Shown here in pieces: positions 33,096 to 48,905 of a stretch of 64,000 bases of DNA; position 1 is the stretch's first letter; each line of letters starts with the position of its first letter. The stretch is taken from the sequence record PP813861.1. One strand, 5' to 3'. The translations under genes and the position numbers were made by a program. The notes under the pieces are model-generated. The model had not been told where the DNA came from. It made no database searches and saw nothing but the letters and a program-made list of their open reading frames with translations.

Positions 33096-33164
33096 GCTTT
33101 TTTTTAGATATAACTGGTACGATGGTATGGTTAATAATGAATCAATCTTAAAAGACAAAATAAA

Positions 33165-33184
33165 GCCCTCCCCGAAGGGAGGGC
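33165..33184 (-). terminator. Intrinsic terminator with UUCG loop
   Basis: Minus strand GCCCTCCC-TTCG-GGGAGGGC then TTTATTTTGTCTTTT. Confidence 0.85.
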
Positions 33185-33195
33185 AATATGTCATT

Positions 33196-36100
33196 TTAAA
33201 TAACAGCACCTTTGGAAACTATCCAGTTAGTACCATCCCATAAGAGGGTGAGAACTGTTTTAGTATCACCTAGGTCATCTACTATTACTGGAGTACCATT
33301 GTTCCACTGTAGCACTGCACTAGACAGTGTTGGCATAGCTACCTTACCAAGCAATACAAGAACAGCTGTGATCATGCGATCAACAGGTCCATTCTCTAGT
33401 GTAATGGTTTGGTTAGCAGCAGTTTGAACCCTATAGCACTGCTGGTTAGCAGGTGTTATAGTCAGAGCTGTACCAGTGAATGTACTTGATTTTAGGCTAT
33501 ATGCATCGAATGATTTATCTAGCTTCTTCCAAGTAATATTAGTACCAGTACGGCTACGTAGCCAATCACCATCAGCGGTTACATCATTATTCGGACCTTG
33601 GAATAGAGTCCATGATTTAGCCGCAGCATTACGTAGGAATAGTTGTCCACTAGTAGCATCAGCTTGATCAACTATAATAGTTACAGGTGTCCATTTAGAA
33701 CCACTAGCTGTTTTCTCACGTACATAGTTAGTGCCATTAGCACCTTCACTAGGTACTTCACCAATAACTGCGGCTGGTACAGCTACCCATTCACCATTTT
33801 GCATACCCATTAGAGTATCATCGGTTTGCAGAGGTGCTACATCAACCCAGTTACCAGCTACACGACCTTGAGGCTTAGTAGCTTGTGCAGTATCGCGTAC
33901 TACATCTGAAGGAATTTCTGGGAATGTAATGGTAGCCCATTCAGTTTCACCCCCTGCAATACCTTTACGAACGTATTGTGCATTAACAACTGGACTAGGT
34001 ACAGCATCAATGGCAGGTGTTGGTAATTCAATAGCAGTCCATTCAACAGCCCCGTCAGCGGTTGCTTTACGGCGACCATAGAAGACACCTACTTCAGCAT
34101 CTACCACCTCATCAACAGGTAGTTCAGTCCAACCGAGTTTGTACCGAACCATTTTCTTATCGACATCTTCTGGATCGACTTCACTAACTGGAACTGACAT
34201 TAATTTGTAGAATACAACCCAGTTAGCATCTTTATACCAAACGGTACCAGTTTTGTCGATACACCAGTCACCACGATTACCATCGATAGAAGTGGGTGCA
34301 GTTTGACCTTCAGGTAGAATTACCCAAGAGGATCCACGTTCACCTTTCTGACCGGTTTTACCAGGGATACCTGGAACACCTTGTTTACCTTCAGGACCTT
34401 CAGGGCCCTGCGGACCCATGGCTAAGACACCTAGGCTTTCCCAAGTAAATGTACCTTCAGTATCGATACTTACAAATACTTCTACTTGTCCTTCAGTATT
34501 GGTGCGAATGGCAATACCTTTACCTACGTTATCAGCAGATGCTACTGGTTTACCAGCATCATCACCAACATAGATAATTAATAGACCACCACCTTGTTTA
34601 CCTTCAGGACCTTGTGGGCCTTCGACACCCTGGATACCCTGCTCACCATTTAGATTAATTGGGCCGATATAGCCATCAATTTCCTGACCTTGGTAAGTAT
34701 AGAGCATTGTACCTTCGTTAGTTTCAACCCAGTATGAATCACCAGTTACTAAGTCAGGATCAGTGTCTTTCTTTGGTAGTTGTGAAGCATCGGTTAAAAC
34801 ACCTTTAATGTTTAAACCTTCACCCGGTTTACCTTGCGGACCTGCCATAATACCAATGCTAGTCCAGCGACTACCGTCCATGTTAACAAATACTTCGCCC
34901 GTGGACTTAACAGTATATGCTTTCCATTGGTTATCGGCAAGTGCTTCTGGTGGGGTATCTTCAGGAGTGTCAATCGCTGCGATGATCTGGATAGGTTCAC
35001 CAGCGGGACCTTGTGGGCCTTCTGGTCCCTCGGGTCCTTCTGGTCCCTGATCACCGTCTTTACCAGGTGCGCCATCTTCACCTTTAGGACCTCGATGTGT
35101 ACCACTATTTACCCAATTACCATCTATCTTAACAAATAAGGTAGATGTGTCTTGTGTGAAGTACGCTGCCTGATCAGGAGCATCTGCCGGCAGGGCTGCC
35201 TCATTGGCAACAGCACCAGTAATAACTACGTTCTTACCATGTAGACTGATTAACCATTCACCCTCAGTACCAGTGAAGCCATTGTCCAATGCTACTTGGA
35301 AAGCCGATTTACCTTGTGCCCCTGGTTCACCAGGTAGACCTTGTTCGCCATCTTCACCTTGCGGACCTTCAGGGCCCTGCGGGCCACGGAATGAACCCAT
35401 GGCTGTCCATGAGATATCAACAGTCGGATCTTGGCCAGTCAGTACATAAACCGTATTGGTGGAACGTACTGAAACACCTTGGTATTGTTCTACACCAGTG
35501 GTGGTTAATAGATCATCAGCAGTTTCAACTGCTTTAACTACTTCTAAGTTACGACCTTGTGGACCAGGTTCACCTTGTTTACCATCGGGACCCGGATCAC
35601 CTGTATTACCTGGTTTACCTTGTGGGCCCTCAGGGCCTTGGAAAGTACCTAGGTCTGACCATGCCCCTTTTACAAAGATGAATAGATGTTCTGGTTTACC
35701 AGCTTCCATAGTAACTAAGTATGCTTCTGATTCTTTAGCTACAGATGGATCAGGTAAATCAGCTGGTGATGGTAGTGAATCCTTAATGGTAAACGGCATT
35801 GCTGGTTCACCCTGAGGACCTTCAGGACCAATTTCACCATCTTTACCTTGCGGACCCTCAGGGCCCTCAGGTCCACGTTCACCCTGTGGTGTAACTGGGA
35901 ACCAATCATAGTCATCAATAGTTGGATTCTCTGGCGGATTATTACCTGAGATAAGCATCCACGCCCAGAGTTGATTATTCCATGAATAAGCATCTCCAGG
36001 TTTATTACTTTCAGTCTTAGGTAATTCTAAGTTATTAGGCCAACGACCACGGATAACTAGACCAGTACCATCTGGACCACGAAGTGAACCTGTTTCAACC

Positions 36101-36477
36101 CAACGACCTTTTACAGGGGGGTCTTCATTACCTAGCGGTGATTCCCACACCCATAGCCGATCTTCAACGAACCAAGCATCACCGACATTATGCGTATCTA
36201 ATGGTTTAATATCTTGTTCGAATGTTGCTAGATCAACATTAGCGATAATGTTAATAGCCGGACCAACTGGGCCAGGAGGGCCTTGTTCGCCATCTTTACC
36301 CGGCTGACCATCTTCACCCTTTAATCCAGGTATAGTAACAGGATCAACGAAAGTAGTATTAAGACCCACCCCGGTAGAAACCGGGATGTGTCCATTAACT
36401 ACAGAAGTGGGCTCATCAATTGATGATACCCGTTTGGGGAGTTCCCCGTTTACATAATCTTCAAATGCAGAAGCCAT
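33196..36477 (-). CDS. Collagen-like tail fibre protein (phiKZ gp146-like)
   Basis: 1093 aa with multiple Gly-X-Y runs (GPQ/GPE/GEP/GKD) alternating with a repeated small beta domain, then YVR...W repeats and a tip domain. Confidence 0.85.
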   Translation of the reverse strand: MASAFEDYVNGELPKRVSSIDEPTSVVNGHIPVSTGVGLNTTFVDPVTIPGLKGEDGQPGKDGEQGPPGPVGPAINIIANVDLATFEQDIKPLDTHNVGDAWFVEDRLWVWESPLGNEDPPVKGRWVETGSLRGPDGTGLVIRGRWPNNLELPKTESNKPGDAYSWNNQLWAWMLISGNNPPENPTIDDYDWFPVTPQGERGPEGPEGPQGKDGEIGPEGPQGEPAMPFTIKDSLPSPADLPDPSVAKESEAYLVTMEAGKPEHLFIFVKGAWSDLGTFQGPEGPQGKPGNTGDPGPDGKQGEPGPQGRNLEVVKAVETADDLLTTTGVEQYQGVSVRSTNTVYVLTGQDPTVDISWTAMGSFRGPQGPEGPQGEDGEQGLPGEPGAQGKSAFQVALDNGFTGTEGEWLISLHGKNVVITGAVANEAALPADAPDQAAYFTQDTSTLFVKIDGNWVNSGTHRGPKGEDGAPGKDGDQGPEGPEGPEGPQGPAGEPIQIIAAIDTPEDTPPEALADNQWKAYTVKSTGEVFVNMDGSRWTSIGIMAGPQGKPGEGLNIKGVLTDASQLPKKDTDPDLVTGDSYWVETNEGTMLYTYQGQEIDGYIGPINLNGEQGIQGVEGPQGPEGKQGGGLLIIYVGDDAGKPVASADNVGKGIAIRTNTEGQVEVFVSIDTEGTFTWESLGVLAMGPQGPEGPEGKQGVPGIPGKTGQKGERGSSWVILPEGQTAPTSIDGNRGDWCIDKTGTVWYKDANWVVFYKLMSVPVSEVDPEDVDKKMVRYKLGWTELPVDEVVDAEVGVFYGRRKATADGAVEWTAIELPTPAIDAVPSPVVNAQYVRKGIAGGETEWATITFPEIPSDVVRDTAQATKPQGRVAGNWVDVAPLQTDDTLMGMQNGEWVAVPAAVIGEVPSEGANGTNYVREKTASGSKWTPVTIIVDQADATSGQLFLRNAAAKSWTLFQGPNNDVTADGDWLRSRTGTNITWKKLDKSFDAYSLKSSTFTGTALTITPANQQCYRVQTAANQTITLENGPVDRMITAVLVLLGKVAMPTLSSAVLQWNNGTPVIVDDLGDTKTVLTLLWDGTNWIVSKGAVI

Positions 36478-42216: not shown

Positions 42217-43143
<927 letters not shown>

Positions 43144-43179: not shown

Positions 43180-43199
43180 TCCCCTCCATGTGGAGGGGA
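43180..43199. terminator. Hairpin of the TTATG-flanked family
   Basis: TCCCCTCC-ATGT-GGAGGGGA followed by TTTATGCTGT and the 43209 stop. Confidence 0.65.
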
Positions 43200-43208
43200 T
43201 TTATGCTG

Positions 43209-43697
43209 TTAAGCAAATTTTTCAGGAGCACCACGTACCATTACACAGATCCATGATTGTCCATTATGGGAACGTTTTACTTCATGTAATTGGGATAGAT
43301 GGAATACTAATCCTTCACCTTTTCCAATTAATAGTTCCTCACCATCTAAAATGAACTTAGCATCAGGTCCAATATTCCAAGCAAGAATAGTACCGGACTC
43401 GGGTTTATCTACCCAATAATTCATCTCATCTAGAAATCCATCTATTTTGGGGAAATCTAAAAACCATACTTGTAGTGCTTTGTTAAATAGTTCTTCGCCT
43501 AAAATTGGTTTAATTTCTTTACGCTGTTTAGCAGTCCAATTAAACCATTTTGAAGTATTATAAACACTACATGCTTTAAGGCCATTAGTGCCAACTCGCA
43601 TACGGTGGCCATATGAGTCTCTAAATGAAACTTCGCCTTTAAGCTTTGTTAATGTTTTTAGTTCTGCCTTAGATAGAGTCTTAAGTTTAATTGCCAT
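43209..43697 (-). CDS. Cupin/2OG-Fe(II) oxygenase-like protein with degenerate metal site
   Basis: 162 aa with a double-stranded beta-helix pattern (FILDGE...GEGLVF...LHEV). HxD is replaced (GFLDEMNYWVD) and the terminal Arg is absent. Confidence 0.5.
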   Translation of the reverse strand: MAIKLKTLSKAELKTLTKLKGEVSFRDSYGHRMRVGTNGLKACSVYNTSKWFNWTAKQRKEIKPILGEELFNKALQVWFLDFPKIDGFLDEMNYWVDKPESGTILAWNIGPDAKFILDGEELLIGKGEGLVFHLSQLHEVKRSHNGQSWICVMVRGAPEKFA

Positions 43698-43705
43698 GTT
43701 GTACC

Positions 43706-44188
43706 CTACTCGTAGAGATATATAAGGACGTATCTTTTATTTTTAACTGGAGGGACTTCATGTGGCTCTGAACGGATTGGAAAAATAGTAGCCCTACCTG
43801 GTACATCCTGATAAAACTCACCATTGATCGTTATACCATCGCCATTGTCATTTAATGCAATAACCATGTTGTAACGATAAACAGCTTGGTCGATGTGTTC
43901 AGGCATACCTGTACCAATTTCATATCGGTTGATTAGAACTTCGCCTAACCAAGCACCTTCTACCTTAGGTGCAATATGAAATAGTAATTCCCGTAATTCC
44001 ATTGGCATTTGGTTATGCCCTAAAAACCAATAATCACACTCAGTGATACCTTTGGTTGGGATACTATTAATTTTTTTCCGATTAAACCACCAGGAATCTC
44101 CTAGTGTATCCAGATAAGATACAAGGTCAGCTGCAAATTCAGCTGAAAACACGTCCTTGGTCGATCTTTCGTGGGCCGATAAGCTCAT
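43706..44188 (-). CDS. 2OG-Fe(II)-dependent dioxygenase (P4H/AlkB superfamily)
   Basis: About 160 aa from MSLSAHE (AGGTGG RBS). INRYEIG...EHID (HxD), PHEVPPV (distal His), KRYVLIY (2OG-binding Arg). Confidence 0.8.
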   Translation of the reverse strand: MSLSAHERSTKDVFSAEFAADLVSYLDTLGDSWWFNRKKINSIPTKGITECDYWFLGHNQMPMELRELLFHIAPKVEGAWLGEVLINRYEIGTGMPEHIDQAVYRYNMVIALNDNGDGITINGEFYQDVPGRATIFPIRSEPHEVPPVKNKRYVLIYLYE

Positions 44189-44741
44189 GCAGGCCACCTG
44201 CATATCGATGTGCTTTCTCAGCGTCGAGATCTTCCCTGGATTTATAGATAACGTCTGGGCTCTCAATTAGGGCCTCCTTATGCGCGCGATTAGTTCGTTT
44301 AACAAGATCAATATAATCAAGCATTTCTTCTAGTTCATCTAACTCTTGACCATATTTTTCAGCTAGCTGTTTAATTGCACGTGCAAGGATATTAATTTGC
44401 TCAGTCACTGGATAGCGTTCAGTAATTTTGTAGGCCACTTTACTATTTAAGTGATCTTCAGTAATCACTTGTGGCGCTTCTTCTTTAGGAACAATCTTCC
44501 AATCGGAAAGTGTAGGTTGTTTACCAGGTGTATTACTTACGACTACATCATAAGTACCCATTTCGGCTTCAACAAAAATGGTGTGCTCACGTGACTTAGC
44601 ATCGAATGCATCTAAAGGTAGATAGCCTACGCTTTGTAGGAATACCTCAGAAGTACGGTTAAACATTAATAGTACTTTTACTTTATCTTCAGTAGGCGCA
44701 GTAGCTAAAGATAGTTCTTGGAGTGATAACGGATTATTCAT
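44139..44741 (-). CDS. Putative tail fibre assembly/accessory protein
   Basis: Start MNNPL overlaps the gp135 stop (TAATG), 200 aa. The ERYPVTEQINIL motif resembles fibre chaperone-like proteins. Confidence 0.5.
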   Translation of the reverse strand: MNNPLSLQELSLATAPTEDKVKVLLMFNRTSEVFLQSVGYLPLDAFDAKSREHTIFVEAEMGTYDVVVSNTPGKQPTLSDWKIVPKEEAPQVITEDHLNSKVAYKITERYPVTEQINILARAIKQLAEKYGQELDELEEMLDYIDLVKRTNRAHKEALIESPDVIYKSREDLDAEKAHRYAGGLHELIGPRKIDQGRVFS

Positions 44742-46132
44742 TATACAAGTGCTCCAGCTCGAATCATCCAACGCCATGTACCATTATTTCTAACTGCTAC
44801 ATATTGCTGGTAATAATAGGCTTCAAAGGGGGTATTAGTTCTAACACCTACAACAGCGTAAGTGCCTTCAGGATATTTGGTATTATCTGTAAACATCGTA
44901 TTTAACGTGTTTAATGCTTCTGCTTCACTATTTACCTGACCTAAGGTAATGGCTTTAATCTTATCTTTGTTCCACTCTTTAAAAGCTTCAACCCAGTCTT
45001 GCCAAGTACCATCGCTTGCTAGATAATATCTCTCAGGGTCATTTAATATTGATGCATTACCTTTACCTAATGCATTCCATTTAAATACGCCACTAGTTAC
45101 TTCTTCAGCTGGAATATCTTTTCGAACATCATTCCAGAAATTCTGATATACCTTACCTGTTCCAGTAACTGGATAACCCTGACTATTAGTAGTAGCACCA
45201 ATAGTGGTCGCATTAGCAGCTTGTTCATTAATACCTAATAATGGAGTTATTTTAGAATCCATCACTGGTTTGGTATATGATCCAACTTGGTCAGCTGTGA
45301 CAGCATGTGGGTTATTAAAGTTTTTAATATGTGCTGCAAGTTTAGCCAACGTATCAATATTAAGAATACGATAAATACCACCAATTGGCATGTATTTATT
45401 ATTTACGTTTCTATTAACTGACTCAGCTTCAGTAGCAAAACCCCAGTTGGATATCTTATCAAGCGGTGGAATTAACTTGAATCGATCATCAGCATGCGGA
45501 TTATTATAATCAGTTAAGTGTGCTGTAACTCGATCTCTATAATCGTCCACAGCGGTTTTTGCATCAGTGAGATAAACTTTATAATAATCATCGGCAGCAT
45601 TATCCATGGCACTTCTACCGACCCGATAAGCATGTGCTATTCGGTTTAATTCAGTTACCATTGTATCTGTGCCATAAATCTGCCAATATTCATGGCCGTG
45701 AGGTGCAGGCGGATATGCATCGGGTTTACCAATAATATCATCCCAAGTGAAACTTAATTCATCTAATTCAAGTTTATCAAAAACAGCTTTAAGTTCTAAT
45801 GCTGAAATACTAAAGAAACCACCAACTGCTCTATATGTAACTTGGACATTAGGACTAACATTAGGATCAGTTACTACAACAATACCCATTACTTCTAAGC
45901 CAGTCATTTCAGATAACTGTGAATAAAGATAGGTTGTTTTATATTGATCTTTGTTTAAAGATAAACCAGTCTTCTTATCACGTAGATTAAAGTCCTTAGT
46001 ATAAAAACCACCATGTGTACACATAAGTACGCGATGTGTTTTATTATTGACTTGAATAAGTGTGTGATCCTCATCTACAATGTAATTAGATGCTAATTTA
46101 GCTTTTAGATCTAATGGTAAAAAAGTAATCAT
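44741..46132 (-). CDS. gp131-family tail fibre/baseplate protein (phiKZ gp135-like)
   Basis: 463 aa with HLTDYNNPH and HIKNFNNPHAVTADQV repeats; paralogous N-terminus. Confidence 0.78.
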   Translation of the reverse strand: MITFLPLDLKAKLASNYIVDEDHTLIQVNNKTHRVLMCTHGGFYTKDFNLRDKKTGLSLNKDQYKTTYLYSQLSEMTGLEVMGIVVVTDPNVSPNVQVTYRAVGGFFSISALELKAVFDKLELDELSFTWDDIIGKPDAYPPAPHGHEYWQIYGTDTMVTELNRIAHAYRVGRSAMDNAADDYYKVYLTDAKTAVDDYRDRVTAHLTDYNNPHADDRFKLIPPLDKISNWGFATEAESVNRNVNNKYMPIGGIYRILNIDTLAKLAAHIKNFNNPHAVTADQVGSYTKPVMDSKITPLLGINEQAANATTIGATTNSQGYPVTGTGKVYQNFWNDVRKDIPAEEVTSGVFKWNALGKGNASILNDPERYYLASDGTWQDWVEAFKEWNKDKIKAITLGQVNSEAEALNTLNTMFTDNTKYPEGTYAVVGVRTNTPFEAYYYQQYVAVRNNGTWRWMIRAGALV

Positions 46133-47505
46133 TATGCCGGTTCCCCTATATTAGTCCACGTTGATCCAACTTTACGTAGGAATAGAGTATTCCTATAGGA
46201 AGTAGCTGTTGTACCATTGCCATGTCCAATAACGAATTCTTGATCGTAATGGCAAATAGCTAATGAACCAGGCCACCATTGTTCAGGATCTGAGAAGTAT
46301 GTGTTATGGAAGGCAATTGCTTCTTGAATAGATTTAAAGTTGGTGTTATTCCAGTGGACCATCGTCCCTGTTTTTTGGAAGCGATTAAATATAAAACCGA
46401 AATGAGTCCATTGACCATTAGGCATCAATGTCCAATCACGGCCTGGCCAGGTAGCTGAATTACCAATCCTACCAGGTGCTAGTCGACCAGTCGTCAATAC
46501 ACTTAAAGGCATTTTAGCACGTACTGTTTCACCCATGCTATAAACATCTTGACCAAATAAAAGTTTAGACGTATTGGCTGTTTTACCTTTATCTAATTTT
46601 TGATTTAGTAAAATATTAGCTTGAGTAACAGTATACGTATTTAATTGTTCAGCCGTTACCCTGTGTGGGTTAGTGGTGACATCATTAACGTGTGCCAGAT
46701 ATTGAACTGTATAATTGGTATCAACTGATAACTTCATTGACCATGGCGTAGCATAGACATTCATGATAGCGCCATTTGGCTGTTTGGCTTGTGTTTCAGT
46801 TGCAATGCCAGCATTATAAACATTACCTAATGCCACTTGCCCTTTACGTGTCTGGTGTGGGTTAGTGGTGGTATCATTGATGTGTGTAGTAAGTCGTGCT
46901 TCAATTGTATTAAGATCAGCTTCTATTAGACTTAACTGATATTTAAACTCATCTAAAATGGAGTCATATGAGTCTGATGAGCTTTTCTTTAATAAGTCAG
47001 TTATTTCTTTTAACTTAACAACTCTAGGCGTAAAACCATAAAGTTCCCAATAGGCATGCATATGTCCATTAGGTTTAAATTGGTCAGGAATATCTAAAAT
47101 ATTAGACCAATGTGGTTTACGGGTATTATTTAAAAGAGCGTTAGCATGCTCAGATATGGAAGGGGAAAGGTTACAGTATATACCACCGCACATCTGAGCA
47201 TCAATGTAAATATCCTCGTGGACATCTTGTTTTGTAATAACAATTACTGAACACGCTTCAAGTCCAGTCTTCTCGATTACTTCTGGATTAATACCAGTAC
47301 ACTGATAATCCATTTCTGGATTTAACTCATTCTGCCTACCATCTCTGATAACCATTCCTTTAGTGTAAAAGTAACCCTTATCCATCACGATGATGCGATA
47401 GGGGAATCCTTTCTGTTTTGCTAGTGAATGGTATTCACCCTTTGTTCGGTTACTATAACTCTCTCCAGTTTCATCAAATGGAAGAGGTAAAAGTAATGGA
47501 TTCAT
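46132..47505 (-). CDS. gp131-family tail fibre/baseplate protein (phiKZ gp134-like)
   Basis: 457 aa with NPHQTRKGQVALGNV and NPHRVTAEQL repeats. Confidence 0.78.
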   Translation of the reverse strand: MNPLLLPLPFDETGESYSNRTKGEYHSLAKQKGFPYRIIVMDKGYFYTKGMVIRDGRQNELNPEMDYQCTGINPEVIEKTGLEACSVIVITKQDVHEDIYIDAQMCGGIYCNLSPSISEHANALLNNTRKPHWSNILDIPDQFKPNGHMHAYWELYGFTPRVVKLKEITDLLKKSSSDSYDSILDEFKYQLSLIEADLNTIEARLTTHINDTTTNPHQTRKGQVALGNVYNAGIATETQAKQPNGAIMNVYATPWSMKLSVDTNYTVQYLAHVNDVTTNPHRVTAEQLNTYTVTQANILLNQKLDKGKTANTSKLLFGQDVYSMGETVRAKMPLSVLTTGRLAPGRIGNSATWPGRDWTLMPNGQWTHFGFIFNRFQKTGTMVHWNNTNFKSIQEAIAFHNTYFSDPEQWWPGSLAICHYDQEFVIGHGNGTTATSYRNTLFLRKVGSTWTNIGEPA

Positions 47506-47516
47506 CTAAACTATCC

Positions 47517-48905
47517 TTATGGAATTACCCAGCCACCTTGTGAACGGAAACACACGTAGTTAGGAGTATAATCAACGAAAATCAATCCGTTACCAGCCGC
47601 CTGGATTTTCTGTTCTTTAATAGTGAAGAATACAGTAGATCCAATAGGCCATGCATCTGGATTAGTGAAGTTAGTTCTACAGAAATCTAATGCTGCTTGC
47701 ACGGATGGTTGTAATCCTAGTGCATAAAACTTTAACTTAACCGGATATGAATACTCTGTGGCTAATTGATCAAAGTGTGTAAAAATACCATTCCCACGGA
47801 GTGGTGCTTTCCATTGTCCCATTGTCCCGGAACCAATCCGATTTATATTGATGACATTACTCTGGCCATCGCCAGCTGTAAAGTTCACGTCTGTGTCAAA
47901 GTTCTTACGCATCCACCAAATAAGATCGCTATAACCCATTAAAGTAGCAGTTGGTTGCCCTTTAGGTTTATAATAAACCATATTAGTATTAGCTACTGTA
48001 TCAGTCTTTAAATATTTACCAGTAATTCGTGAATCAAAATCACTTTTCAAATACGACTGTACATGCGTATTTTTTACTTTATGTGGATTATCACGGCGAG
48101 CTATGTGGACATTAAGTGGTTTTATAGCTATTTCATCTAATACGCCATATGCTAACTGCGGTGTTAGATAATGTGCATTAGATTGACCTAGTTGAGCAAT
48201 GGCTGGAGTAGCCAATGGAAAGTTATTAACTAAACCTAGTTCAACATTAGTTGGGGTAATCTTGTGTGGATTAGCTTTATCTTGAATATGTTTTTCTAGG
48301 CGATCATTAAATTTCTTTAAGAACTCATCATAAATCTCTTTAACTTTACTACGGTATTCATCTTCACCGCTTGTATCACCAGCCATGAGTGCCTGTGTTA
48401 TCCACTCCATCTCGTTATTATAAGGCTGATACGTATCAAGATGCCATCGTTCGCCAACTAACTCACCGTCTTTCCAATATGGTTCGTTACCAGTGTAGTC
48501 GAGATCTTTTGGCTTTGGCTTACCATTTGTTTTCCACCAGTTAATATAATCGTCGATAACTGTGAAACTAAACGCTAGATCACCGCCTACCATGTGAGCT
48601 GAAGTATACACTATTGGTGTACTAGGTGTTTTTAAGAAAACAATTGCTGAACATATTTCTTGACCGACATACGCACTAGCATCTTTGTGATAATAAGTAA
48701 CAATATAATCAATATCTTTAACTAAACGATTATATTTACCATCATAAACTTCTAACCCTTTTGTATAGAATCCACCATGATATAACTTGATGATTCTATA
48801 GTCGAATCCCTGATACTGAACTAGAGTATGAGGCTCGCTACCAATGAAACAATCTGGATTTGTACCTAATGGATCAAATGGTAATTGTAAAATAGGATTA
48901 TACAT
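47517..48905 (-). CDS. gp131-family tail fibre/baseplate protein (phiKZ gp133-like)
   Basis: 462 aa with LPFDPLGTNPD start and HIQDKANPHKIT repeats. Confidence 0.78.
   Translation of the reverse strand: MYNPILQLPFDPLGTNPDCFIGSEPHTLVQYQGFDYRIIKLYHGGFYTKGLEVYDGKYNRLVKDIDYIVTYYHKDASAYVGQEICSAIVFLKTPSTPIVYTSAHMVGGDLAFSFTVIDDYINWWKTNGKPKPKDLDYTGNEPYWKDGELVGERWHLDTYQPYNNEMEWITQALMAGDTSGEDEYRSKVKEIYDEFLKKFNDRLEKHIQDKANPHKITPTNVELGLVNNFPLATPAIAQLGQSNAHYLTPQLAYGVLDEIAIKPLNVHIARRDNPHKVKNTHVQSYLKSDFDSRITGKYLKTDTVANTNMVYYKPKGQPTATLMGYSDLIWWMRKNFDTDVNFTAGDGQSNVININRIGSGTMGQWKAPLRGNGIFTHFDQLATEYSYPVKLKFYALGLQPSVQAALDFCRTNFTNPDAWPIGSTVFFTIKEQKIQAAGNGLIFVDYTPNYVCFRSQGGWVIP

What the first reader, a model, noticed from the sequence alone, without database searches (positions are those of the whole stretch)
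43209..44741. Oxygenase plus pseudo-oxygenase coupled to the tail-fibre operon: a possible fibre/collagen hydroxylation system
Seen: the last gp131-family fibre gene is followed, with TAATG coupling, by a chaperone-like gene. Next comes a complete 2OG-Fe(II) dioxygenase (HID...PHEV...KRY) overlapping it by 50 nt. A same-sized paralogue-like cupin follows 8 nt later; it keeps LHEV but lacks HxD and the Arg. The same window encodes a Pro-rich Gly-X-Y fibre (gp146) with Y-position prolines (GEP, GKP, GPP, GLP, GIP, GAP). Known: this superfamily includes prolyl and lysyl hydroxylases, and eukaryotic giant viruses use such enzymes, some on collagen-like proteins. Inference: an enzyme plus scaffold pair may post-translationally modify virion fibres. 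The alternative is an AlkB-type nucleic-acid role.
Basis: partly seen in the sequence, partly recalled or inferred. Interest (0 to 1): 0.75.

Follow-up and report, generated by a model that had tools for sequence, protein, structure and literature searches.

The report
Fibre-tip oxygenase plus pseudo-oxygenase cassette
Three small genes after the phiKZ tail-fibre genes (a chaperone-like protein, an intact iron/2-oxoglutarate oxygenase and its catalytically dead copy) always travel with one fibre-tip domain across unrelated phages, which points to fibre maturation rather than collagen or DNA modification.

Summary
The window is a phiKZ-type Pseudomonas jumbo phage. gp137 is an intact 2OG-Fe(II) oxygenase: its six key residues are invariant in 106 homologues, and its closest solved folds are all protein hydroxylases. 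gp138 is a divergent paralogue with the same fold but no iron-binding triad and no 2OG-binding Arg.

New here: gp136, gp137 and gp138 form a fixed three-gene cassette in every locus examined. The cassette always follows a fibre gene ending in one ~75-residue C-terminal domain ("fibC"; gp133-135 in the window). This holds in phiKZ-like, T4-like, 115-kb and metagenomic backbones. Among gp139-anchored loci, 23 have cassette plus fibC, 20 have neither, and one has fibC plus gp136 only.

The collagen-like gp146 is not the linked partner. A complete cassette-bearing phage has no collagen-like protein, and cassette-less relatives carry Pro-rich collagen-like proteins.

Published phiKZ TnSeq data show insertions tolerated in gp137 but not in gp136 or gp138.

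Best reading: a fibre-tip maturation module made of an assembly factor, an accessory hydroxylase and a pseudoenzyme partner. The hydroxylation itself is inferred, not shown.

The parts
47517..48905 (-). gp133 fibre paralogue; fibC domain at about 47520-47756
   Evidence: fibC profile E 1.2e-20 at the extreme C-terminus. Virion fibre component in the phiKZ cryo-EM atlas (PMC13250141).
46132..47505 (-). gp134 fibre paralogue; fibC domain at about 46135-46386
   Evidence: fibC profile E 9.9e-18. Carries the PxG[ST], GNG and terminal W landmarks.
44741..46132 (-). gp135 fibre paralogue; diverged fibC domain at about 44744-44980
   Evidence: fibC profile E 4.3e-13. Its stop overlaps the gp136 start, TAATG.
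44139..44741 (-). gp136, fibre-tip-linked assembly-factor candidate (phrog_13209, function unknown)
   Evidence: A homologue is present in 55 of 55 gp137-anchored loci, always directly after the fibC fibre. It is kept in L101 where gp137 and gp138 are absent. No Pfam or PDB match. It has 0 filtered Tn insertions in phiKZ.
43706..44188 (-). gp137, intact 2OG-Fe(II) oxygenase
   Evidence: PF13640 E 2e-5. N87, Y89, H98, D100, H143 and R152 are invariant in 106 homologues. AF2 pLDDT 92. The top 50 PDB folds include PHD2, LH3, PBCV-1 P4H, P. putida P4H, mimivirus L230, AspH and PiuC. Tn insertions are tolerated.
43209..43697 (-). gp138, catalytically dead paralogue of gp137 (pseudo-oxygenase)
   Evidence: hhalign against the gp137 family: 95.5 %, E 1.5e-8. 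AF2 pLDDT 97 with a DSBH fold. At the first-His position W occurs in 52 of 60 and H never; at the Arg position Q occurs in 31 of 60. It has 0 filtered Tn insertions.
43180..43199 (.). 8-bp G+C hairpin in the 95-nt gap between gp138 and gp139, a possible unit boundary
   Evidence: Folding gives -16.5 kcal/mol, z -3.4. The T-rich tail lies on the + strand, not the gene strand. A TSS upstream of orf139 is reported in doi 10.1101/2025.11.23.690004.

Best explanation
gp136-gp137-gp138 is an accessory cassette of the fibre tip. It is inherited and exchanged together with a ~75-residue C-terminal fibre domain (fibC), carried in phiKZ by gp133, gp134 and gp135. The three proteins are made with the fibres late in infection and are not packaged. 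gp136, and probably the dead oxygenase gp138, act as tip-specific assembly factors. This is analogous in position and co-variation to tail-fibre assembly proteins encoded after fibre genes. gp137 is a minimal Fe(II)/2-oxoglutarate protein hydroxylase that adds an accessory hydroxyl group, most likely to the fibC domain. gp138 would serve as its non-catalytic partner or substrate adaptor. Shown: the gene anatomy, intact catalytic residues in gp137, loss of them in gp138, a shared fold, strict synteny and phyletic co-occurrence with fibC, and absence from virion lists. Inferred: physical interaction, the substrate, the modified residue (the near-invariant Asn of the G-N-G turn is only a candidate), and late co-expression.
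For: Cassette unity: all 55 gp137-anchored loci hold gp136 and gp138 homologues, contiguous and co-directional. The same holds for 5 loci anchored on the most divergent gp138 relatives. Link to fibC: all 51 loci with room upstream have a fibC fibre directly upstream. A fibC profile built only from non-phiKZ backbones finds phiKZ-like fibre C-termini down to E 4e-8. Among 44 gp139-anchored loci the counts are 23 / 20 / 1, Fisher p 1e-11, not corrected for relatedness. Ten cassette-less loci keep the same fibre N-terminal domain with other C-termini. The backbones differ: phiKZ-like, QdP_Psa3 (115 kb, PF12571 fibre N-terminus), T4-like Milchi, and metagenomic fibre clusters. QdP_Psa3 has exactly one fibC protein, the fibre next to the cassette. 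Enzyme. Pseudoenzyme. Not in virions: 201phi2-1 annotation notes and the phiKZ atlas. TnSeq: gp136 and gp138 have no filtered insertions, like the fibres, while gp137 tolerates them.
Against: No hydroxylated residue has been observed. Disruption of gp137 is tolerated in PAO1 at 37 C, so catalysis is not needed for viable fibres there. One natural relative (L101) keeps fibC fibres and gp136 but lacks gp137 and gp138. The subfamily of gp137 is not resolved: TM-scores are 0.55-0.67 to many hydroxylases, and one weak sequence match is to ALKBH8. Synteny shows linkage, not the substrate. The loci are phylogenetically related, so the counts overstate independence. The fibC profile was grown iteratively from fibres chosen by position, though controls limit that circularity. 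Whether fibC occurs widely without the cassette outside these loci could not be tested.
Confidence: 0.5

Rival explanations
1. One reading: gp137, with gp138 as scaffold, hydroxylates Pro or Lys in the collagen-like Gly-X-Y segments of the fibre gp146.
For: gp146 has 63 Gly-X-Y triplets with 38 Pro. The fold neighbours of gp137 include viral collagen prolyl and lysyl hydroxylases (5c5t, 6ax7, 9nev). Within phiKZ-like loci the cassette and Gly-X-Y proteins co-occur 19 / 4 / 6 / 15.
Against: The complete QdP_Psa3 genome has the cassette and no collagen-like gene; its only Gly-X-Y run lies antisense to annotated genes. 36 of 55 cassette loci have no Gly-X-Y ORF within 8 kb. Most cassette-bearing relatives have 2-8 Pro in 40-70 triplets. 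The most Pro-rich collagen-like ORFs (55 of 93, 56 of 82) are in cassette-less loci. gp137 has no peptide-substrate-binding domain (160 aa).
Confidence: 0.07
2. gp137 is an AlkB-like nucleic-acid dioxygenase (repair or base modification), and its place among fibre genes is incidental.
For: The family profile weakly matches ALKBH8 over the motif before HxD (E 0.0075). PF13532 scores E 0.1. The fold neighbours of gp138 include AlkB, ABH2 and NMAD-1. Public records call gp137 a 'DNA endonuclease'.
Against: No AlkB-family structure is among the top 50 fold matches of gp137; these are protein hydroxylases plus a few small-molecule oxygenases. Its 160 residues leave no room for a nucleotide-recognition lid (inference). 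Strict coupling to a fibre-tip domain in unrelated backbones is not expected for a repair enzyme. The 'endonuclease' label has no support in any search here.
Confidence: 0.07
3. The pair acts on a host molecule matched to the fibre tip. This could be the receptor, its precursor, or a host protein such as EF-Tu, which the Pseudomonas prolyl hydroxylase modifies. Such an activity could limit re-adsorption or remodel the cell.
For: Co-variation with the receptor-binding end of a fibre would also arise if the enzyme's target were the receptor. P. putida P4H (the EF-Tu hydroxylase) and PiuC are among the fold neighbours. All 72 isolated carriers infect Pseudomonas.
Against: The N-termini show no signal peptide or membrane segment (read). 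gp136, which has no enzyme features, is the most tightly fibC-linked member. The cassette also occurs in marine and food metagenome phages of unknown hosts. No host-directed function is indicated by any match.
Confidence: 0.12
4. All three proteins are purely structural assembly chaperones, and gp137 no longer needs catalysis.
For: Tn insertions in gp137 are tolerated. gp138 shows that the fold can be kept without chemistry.
Against: All six iron- and 2OG-binding positions are invariant in 106 distinct homologues down to about 30 % identity. That pattern is hard to explain without selection for catalysis.
Confidence: 0.08

Closest known systems
Tail-fibre assembly proteins encoded just after fibre genes (T4 gp38/gp57A, Tfa of lambda, Mu and P2); named from general knowledge
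   Same: Encoded immediately 3' of the fibre gene. Co-varies and is exchanged with the fibre's C-terminal domain. Absent from virion lists.
   Different: There is no sequence or profile membership: all 23 gp136 relatives fall in phrog_13209 (unknown function), and only one weakly touches phrog_105 'tail fiber assembly'. No known fibre chaperone module includes an oxygenase.
Viral protein hydroxylases of structural fibres: PBCV-1 collagen prolyl hydroxylase (5c5t), mimivirus L230 lysyl hydroxylase (6ax7, 9nev)
   Same: Virus-encoded 2OG-Fe(II) oxygenases and fold neighbours of gp137 (E about 5e-6 to 1.4e-5). A virion fibre is the proposed target.
   Different: Those act on collagen-like repeats in viruses of eukaryotes. 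Here the linked partner is a globular fibre-tip domain, and the collagen link fails.
PHD2 / bacterial P4H (P. putida, EF-Tu hydroxylase) group
   Same: HxD...H triad, Arg nine residues after the distal His, and best fold matches. The best Pfam family is PF13640.
   Different: TM-scores are only 0.55-0.64 and the Pfam score is 25.8, below the cut-off of 27. gp137 is a bare 160-residue core without the substrate-binding loops or domains of those enzymes.
Tandem active plus inactive DSBH prolyl hydroxylases (Tpa1 / Ofd1 / OGFOD1); named from general knowledge, did not come back as a top hit
   Same: A catalytic DSBH is paired with a non-catalytic DSBH paralogue.
   Different: There the two domains are fused in one chain. 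Here they are two adjacent genes, and no fusion was found among relatives.
AlkB family
   Same: A shared motif before HxD (ALKBH8, E 0.0075). The gp138 model resembles AlkB, ABH2 and NMAD-1.
   Different: Absent from gp137's top 50 fold matches. The genomic context is fibres, not replication or repair.

Membership tests
2OG-Fe(II) oxygenase superfamily (gp137) | HxD/E...H iron-binding facial triad | tested here: met
   H98, D100 and H143 are invariant in 106 distinct homologues.
2OG-Fe(II) oxygenase superfamily (gp137) | Basic residue binding the 2OG C5 carboxylate after the distal His | tested here: met
   R152, nine residues after H143, is invariant in all 106.
2OG-Fe(II) oxygenase superfamily (gp137) | Double-stranded beta-helix fold | tested here: met
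   AF2 pLDDT 92.2, pTM 0.88. There are 225 PDB matches at E <= 0.001, and those listed are 2OG oxygenases.
2OG-Fe(II) oxygenase superfamily (gp137) | Pfam gathering score of a 2OG-FeII_Oxy family | tested here: inconclusive
   PF13640 scores 25.8 bits against a cut-off of 27. Several homologues carry a precomputed PF13640 hit.
2OG-Fe(II) oxygenase superfamily (gp137) | 2OG-dependent turnover | not testable with these tools
   Biochemical property.
Active 2OG oxygenase (gp138) | Facial triad and 2OG-binding Arg | tested here: not met
   At the aligned first-His position W occurs in 52 of 60 and H in 0 of 60. The Asp position is D in 22 of 60. The Arg position is Q in 31 of 60 and R in 4 of 60. 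The distal His is kept in 57 of 60.
DSBH / cupin fold (gp138) | Fold and homology to the gp137 family | tested here: met
   AF2 pLDDT 97. Foldseek finds NMAD-1, 3dkq, AlkB, P4H and PHD2. hhalign gives 95.5 %. The gp137 model finds PhiPA3 gp157 at E 1.3e-6.
Collagen prolyl/lysyl hydroxylase system | Co-occurrence with a collagen-like (Pro- or Lys-bearing Gly-X-Y) substrate | tested here: not met
   the cassette occurs without collagen-like genes, and Pro-rich collagen-like genes occur without the cassette.
Collagen prolyl/lysyl hydroxylase system | Hydroxy-Pro or hydroxy-Lys in the virion protein | not testable with these tools
   Needs mass spectrometry.
AlkB family | Family-level sequence or fold match | tested here: not met
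   PF13532 E 0.1. ALKBH8 matches over 35 residues only. No AlkB-family chain is in gp137's top 50 folds.
Tail-fibre assembly chaperone (gp136) | Encoded directly after the fibre gene and co-varying with its C-terminal domain | tested here: met
Tail-fibre assembly chaperone (gp136) | Membership of a described chaperone family | tested here: not met
   No Pfam, NCBIfam or PDB match. Only 1 of 23 relatives weakly hits phrog_105.
Tail-fibre assembly chaperone (gp136) | Not a virion component | tested here: met
   201phi2-1 gp221-223 lack the 'identified by mass spectrometry' note that gp216-220 and gp224 carry. gp136 is not mentioned in the phiKZ atlas paper, which identified 40 constituent proteins (PMC13250141).

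The most novel reading that the evidence does not exclude
Tailed phages carry a horizontally mobile fibre-tip maturation cassette. In it, a phage-encoded Fe(II)/2OG hydroxylase, guided by a pseudo-oxygenase paralogue, post-translationally hydroxylates the receptor-binding end of the tail fibre. This would be a phage-encoded covalent modification of a receptor-binding protein. The dead paralogue has itself become an assembly factor that matters more than the enzyme.
Probability: 0.3. Interest if true: 0.8.

Novelty: new variant of a known kind. Interest (0 to 1): 0.6.

Why it matters
Fibre tips decide which bacteria a phage recognises, and their folding usually depends on dedicated helpers. A conserved enzyme plus pseudoenzyme pair locked to one tip domain would add covalent modification to how fibres mature. 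It would assign a role to three genes of unknown function in a model jumbo phage, one of which is mislabelled 'DNA endonuclease' in public records. It would also offer a clear case of a dead enzyme paralogue retained for a non-catalytic job. The full-text searches run here found no paper dealing with these three phiKZ genes.

Tried and rejected
- Direct BLASTP of gp137 against gp138 found nothing; profiles were needed.
- Single-sequence PDB searches gave only chance hits.
- Profiles of gp136 and of fibC against PDB found nothing.
- The word-based homologue search found only near-identical gp138 copies; the exhaustive search found 73 representatives.
- The reverse test, fibC without the cassette in general collections, failed. 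The alignment was too divergent for pattern scanning, and tblastn with single fibC sequences found only themselves.
The cassette is therefore not detectably a prophage or bacterial feature.
- Pairwise-divergence correlations (about 0.7 among the trio, about 0.3 to fibC) did not show which member tracks the fibre.
- No gp137-gp138 fusion protein was found among odd-length relatives.
- NCBIfam and PADLOC gave nothing informative.
- Transcription-unit tables of PMC10914365 are not held, so co-transcription rests on sequence plus one statement about a TSS before orf139.

Full report
IDENTITY AND ANATOMY. The region is 100 % identical to Pseudomonas phage vB_PaeM_FBPa36 and 99.5 % identical to phiKZ. 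The genes are PHIKZ133 to PHIKZ139, all on the - strand. The fibre paralogues are gp133 (47517-48905), gp134 (46132-47505) and gp135 (44741-46132). They are followed by gp136 (44139-44741), gp137 (43706-44188), gp138 (43209-43697), a 95-nt gap, and gp139 (42217-43113). gp146 (33196-36477) does carry Pro-rich Gly-X-Y runs.

gp137. Pfam gives PF13640 at E 2e-5, just under its cut-off. The PHROG and RefSeq label 'DNA endonuclease' has no support in any search. In 106 distinct homologues N87, Y89, H98, D100, H143 and R152 never vary. The AlphaFold2 model is confident, with pLDDT 92. Most of its 50 best PDB matches are protein hydroxylases: PHD2, Dictyostelium PHD, lysyl hydroxylase LH3, PBCV-1 collagen prolyl hydroxylase, P. 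putida P4H, mimivirus L230 and AspH. The rest are other 2OG oxygenases such as PiuC, PolD and AviO1, and no AlkB-family chain is among them. TM-scores of 0.55-0.67 do not single out a subfamily. One weak profile match is to ALKBH8, over the motif before HxD. gp137 is therefore a member of the superfamily, of protein-hydroxylase type by fold, with its subfamily open.

gp138. No Pfam family matches, and BLASTP against gp137 finds nothing. An exhaustive search found 73 representative relatives. The family profile aligns with the gp137 family over 140 columns (95.5 %, E 1.5e-8). The model has pLDDT 97 and is a double-stranded beta-helix resembling 2OG oxygenases. Conversely, the gp137 model retrieves the PhiPA3 homologue of gp138. 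At the position of the first iron-binding His the family has W in 52 of 60 and never H. The Asp position is D in 22 of 60. The Arg position is Q in 31 of 60. The distal His is kept in 57 of 60.

THE CASSETTE. tblastn finds gp137 and gp138 in 72 phage records each, adjacent wherever both coordinates are listed, and all from Pseudomonas phages. These include backbones unrelated to phiKZ: QdP_Psa3 (115 kb) and the T4-like Milchi and Astolliot. I fetched 51 IMG/VR loci holding gp137 relatives and scanned them, together with the four annotated phage loci, using locally built profiles. All 55 loci hold gp136, gp137 and gp138 homologues, contiguous and co-directional. The order is permuted to 136-138-137 in four loci. 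gp139 and gp140 are present in only 25 of them. Five further loci, anchored on the most divergent gp138 relatives, show the same arrangement.

THE LINKED PARTNER. The ORF upstream of gp136 is always a large fibre-like protein, and its last ~75 residues are alignable across all backbones. A profile built only from non-phiKZ backbones detects the C-termini of phiKZ-like fibre paralogues down to E 4e-8. After iteration it hits gp133, gp134 and gp135 in the window (E 1e-20 to 4e-13) and nothing else in the 64 kb. Every significant hit lies at the extreme C-terminus of its ORF. All 51 loci with room upstream have such a fibre directly upstream. In 41 it is the adjacent ORF; in the other 10 the two preceding paralogues carry it. 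Column shares in 79 distinct domains are W 79, N 70, G 70 and S/T 76. The N-terminal anchors differ between backbones: gp131-type in phiKZ, PF12571 in QdP_Psa3. What travels together is therefore the tip domain plus the three genes. In two metagenomic loci the cassette lies inside clusters of fibre genes.

PHYLETIC TEST. I fetched 44 loci anchored on the backbone gene gp139. Of these, 23 have the cassette and fibC and 20 have neither. Ten of those 20 still carry fibres with the gp131-135-type N-terminal domain but other C-termini. One locus (L101) has three fibC fibres and gp136, followed directly by gp139, so gp137 and gp138 are absent together. The association is far stronger than chance, although the loci are related and not independent. 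In L101 one fibre paralogue has lost the otherwise near-invariant Asn. This is a single case and no more than a hint.

COLLAGEN. The complete QdP_Psa3 genome has the cassette and exactly one fibC protein. Its only Gly-X-Y run lies antisense to annotated genes. For that scan I joined the three overlapping fetches of the public record in memory, unaltered. 36 of 55 cassette loci have no Gly-X-Y ORF within 8 kb. In most phiKZ-like relatives with the cassette the gp146 homologue is Pro-poor. The most Pro-rich collagen-like ORFs sit in cassette-less loci.

EXPERIMENTAL CONTEXT FROM PAPERS. The cryo-EM atlas of phiKZ (PMC13250141) models each fibre base as three gp131 plus one each of gp133, gp134 and gp135. 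The distal parts are unresolved, and gp139 forms the band that ties the fibre platform to the baseplate. gp136-138 are not among the proteins found. In 201phi2-1 the flanking fibres and gp224 are annotated as found by virion mass spectrometry, while gp221-223 are not. The phiKZ TnSeq preprint (doi 10.1101/2025.11.23.690004) gives filtered counts in Table S2. PHIKZ131-136, 138, 139 and 140 have 0 insertions, and PHIKZ137 has 577 reads at 2 sites. Table S3 gives 604 reads at 8 sites for 137, against 4 reads for 136 and 1 read for 138. The text reports a TSS upstream of orf139. At typical insertion densities, zero sites in 489-603 bp is unlikely for a dispensable gene, though chance and polarity remain possible. 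So the enzyme looks dispensable in the laboratory, while gp136 and gp138 do not.

TRANSCRIPTION SIGNALS. The published phiKZ terminator consensus (PMC10914365) occurs on the gene strand just after gp146 (33155-33184). It occurs nowhere between gp133 and gp146 on that strand at up to 3 mismatches. The hairpin after gp138 is stable, but its T-rich tail is on the opposite strand.

CONCLUSION. The best-supported reading is a fibre-tip maturation cassette, with gp136 as a tip-specific assembly factor. gp137 would be an accessory protein hydroxylase and gp138 its non-catalytic partner, which has acquired a more important role of its own. Linkage to the fibC domain is shown. Hydroxylation, the site and the interactions are inferred. 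The rivals are collagen, nucleic acid, a host target and chaperones only; they are weighed in their own sections.

Noticed in passing
window 43706-44188: RefSeq and PHROG 2297 name gp137 and its relatives 'DNA endonuclease'. Every search here shows a 2OG-Fe(II) oxygenase and nothing nuclease-like.
   Followed up: yes
L069:4786-9767, L078:4357-9436, L083:3856-9207: In phiKZ-like loci that lack the cassette, the same slot upstream of gp139 holds several radical-SAM ORFs (three confirmed by Pfam scan in L069 and two in L078; those of L083 were inferred from Cys-motif similarity only) plus a PF13759 2OG-oxygenase-like ORF. L069, L083 and L084 also encode very Pro-rich collagen-like ORFs nearby. 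This is a different set of putative protein-modifying enzymes at the same place in the tail module.
   Followed up: partly
L101:1436-7692: A 269-kb metagenomic phiKZ-like contig keeps three fibC fibres and gp136 but goes straight to gp139. gp137 and gp138 are absent together, and one fibre paralogue has lost the near-invariant Asn.
   Followed up: partly
window 43180-43199: A stable 8-bp hairpin lies between gp138 and gp139. Its T-rich tail, which resembles the tail of the published phiKZ terminator motif, is on the strand opposite to the genes. This raises the question of antisense transcription here.
   Followed up: partly
window 33155-33184: A match to the published phiKZ intrinsic-terminator consensus (2 mismatches) lies on the gene strand just after the gp146 stop. 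Five more matches occur elsewhere in the window, none expected by chance.
   Followed up: no
L049-L052, L106: The gene order is permuted to gp136-gp138-gp137 in a distinct group of loci, one on a 236-kb contig. The three genes stay contiguous.
   Followed up: no
P0116, P0117, P0120, P0123, P0126, P0127, P0133: A subgroup of gp138 relatives (207-229 aa) carries an insertion of about 20-45 residues just before the strand bearing the conserved His.
   Followed up: no
window 33196-36477 and L059-L085: Pro content of the Gly-X-Y runs in gp146 homologues varies widely: 38 of 63 triplets in phiKZ, against 2-8 per 40-70 triplets in most relatives.
   Followed up: partly
tool outputs: The literal label of the 162-aa protein is replaced by 'xxxxx' in several tool outputs. 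This is a display filter, not a feature of the sequence.
   Followed up: no
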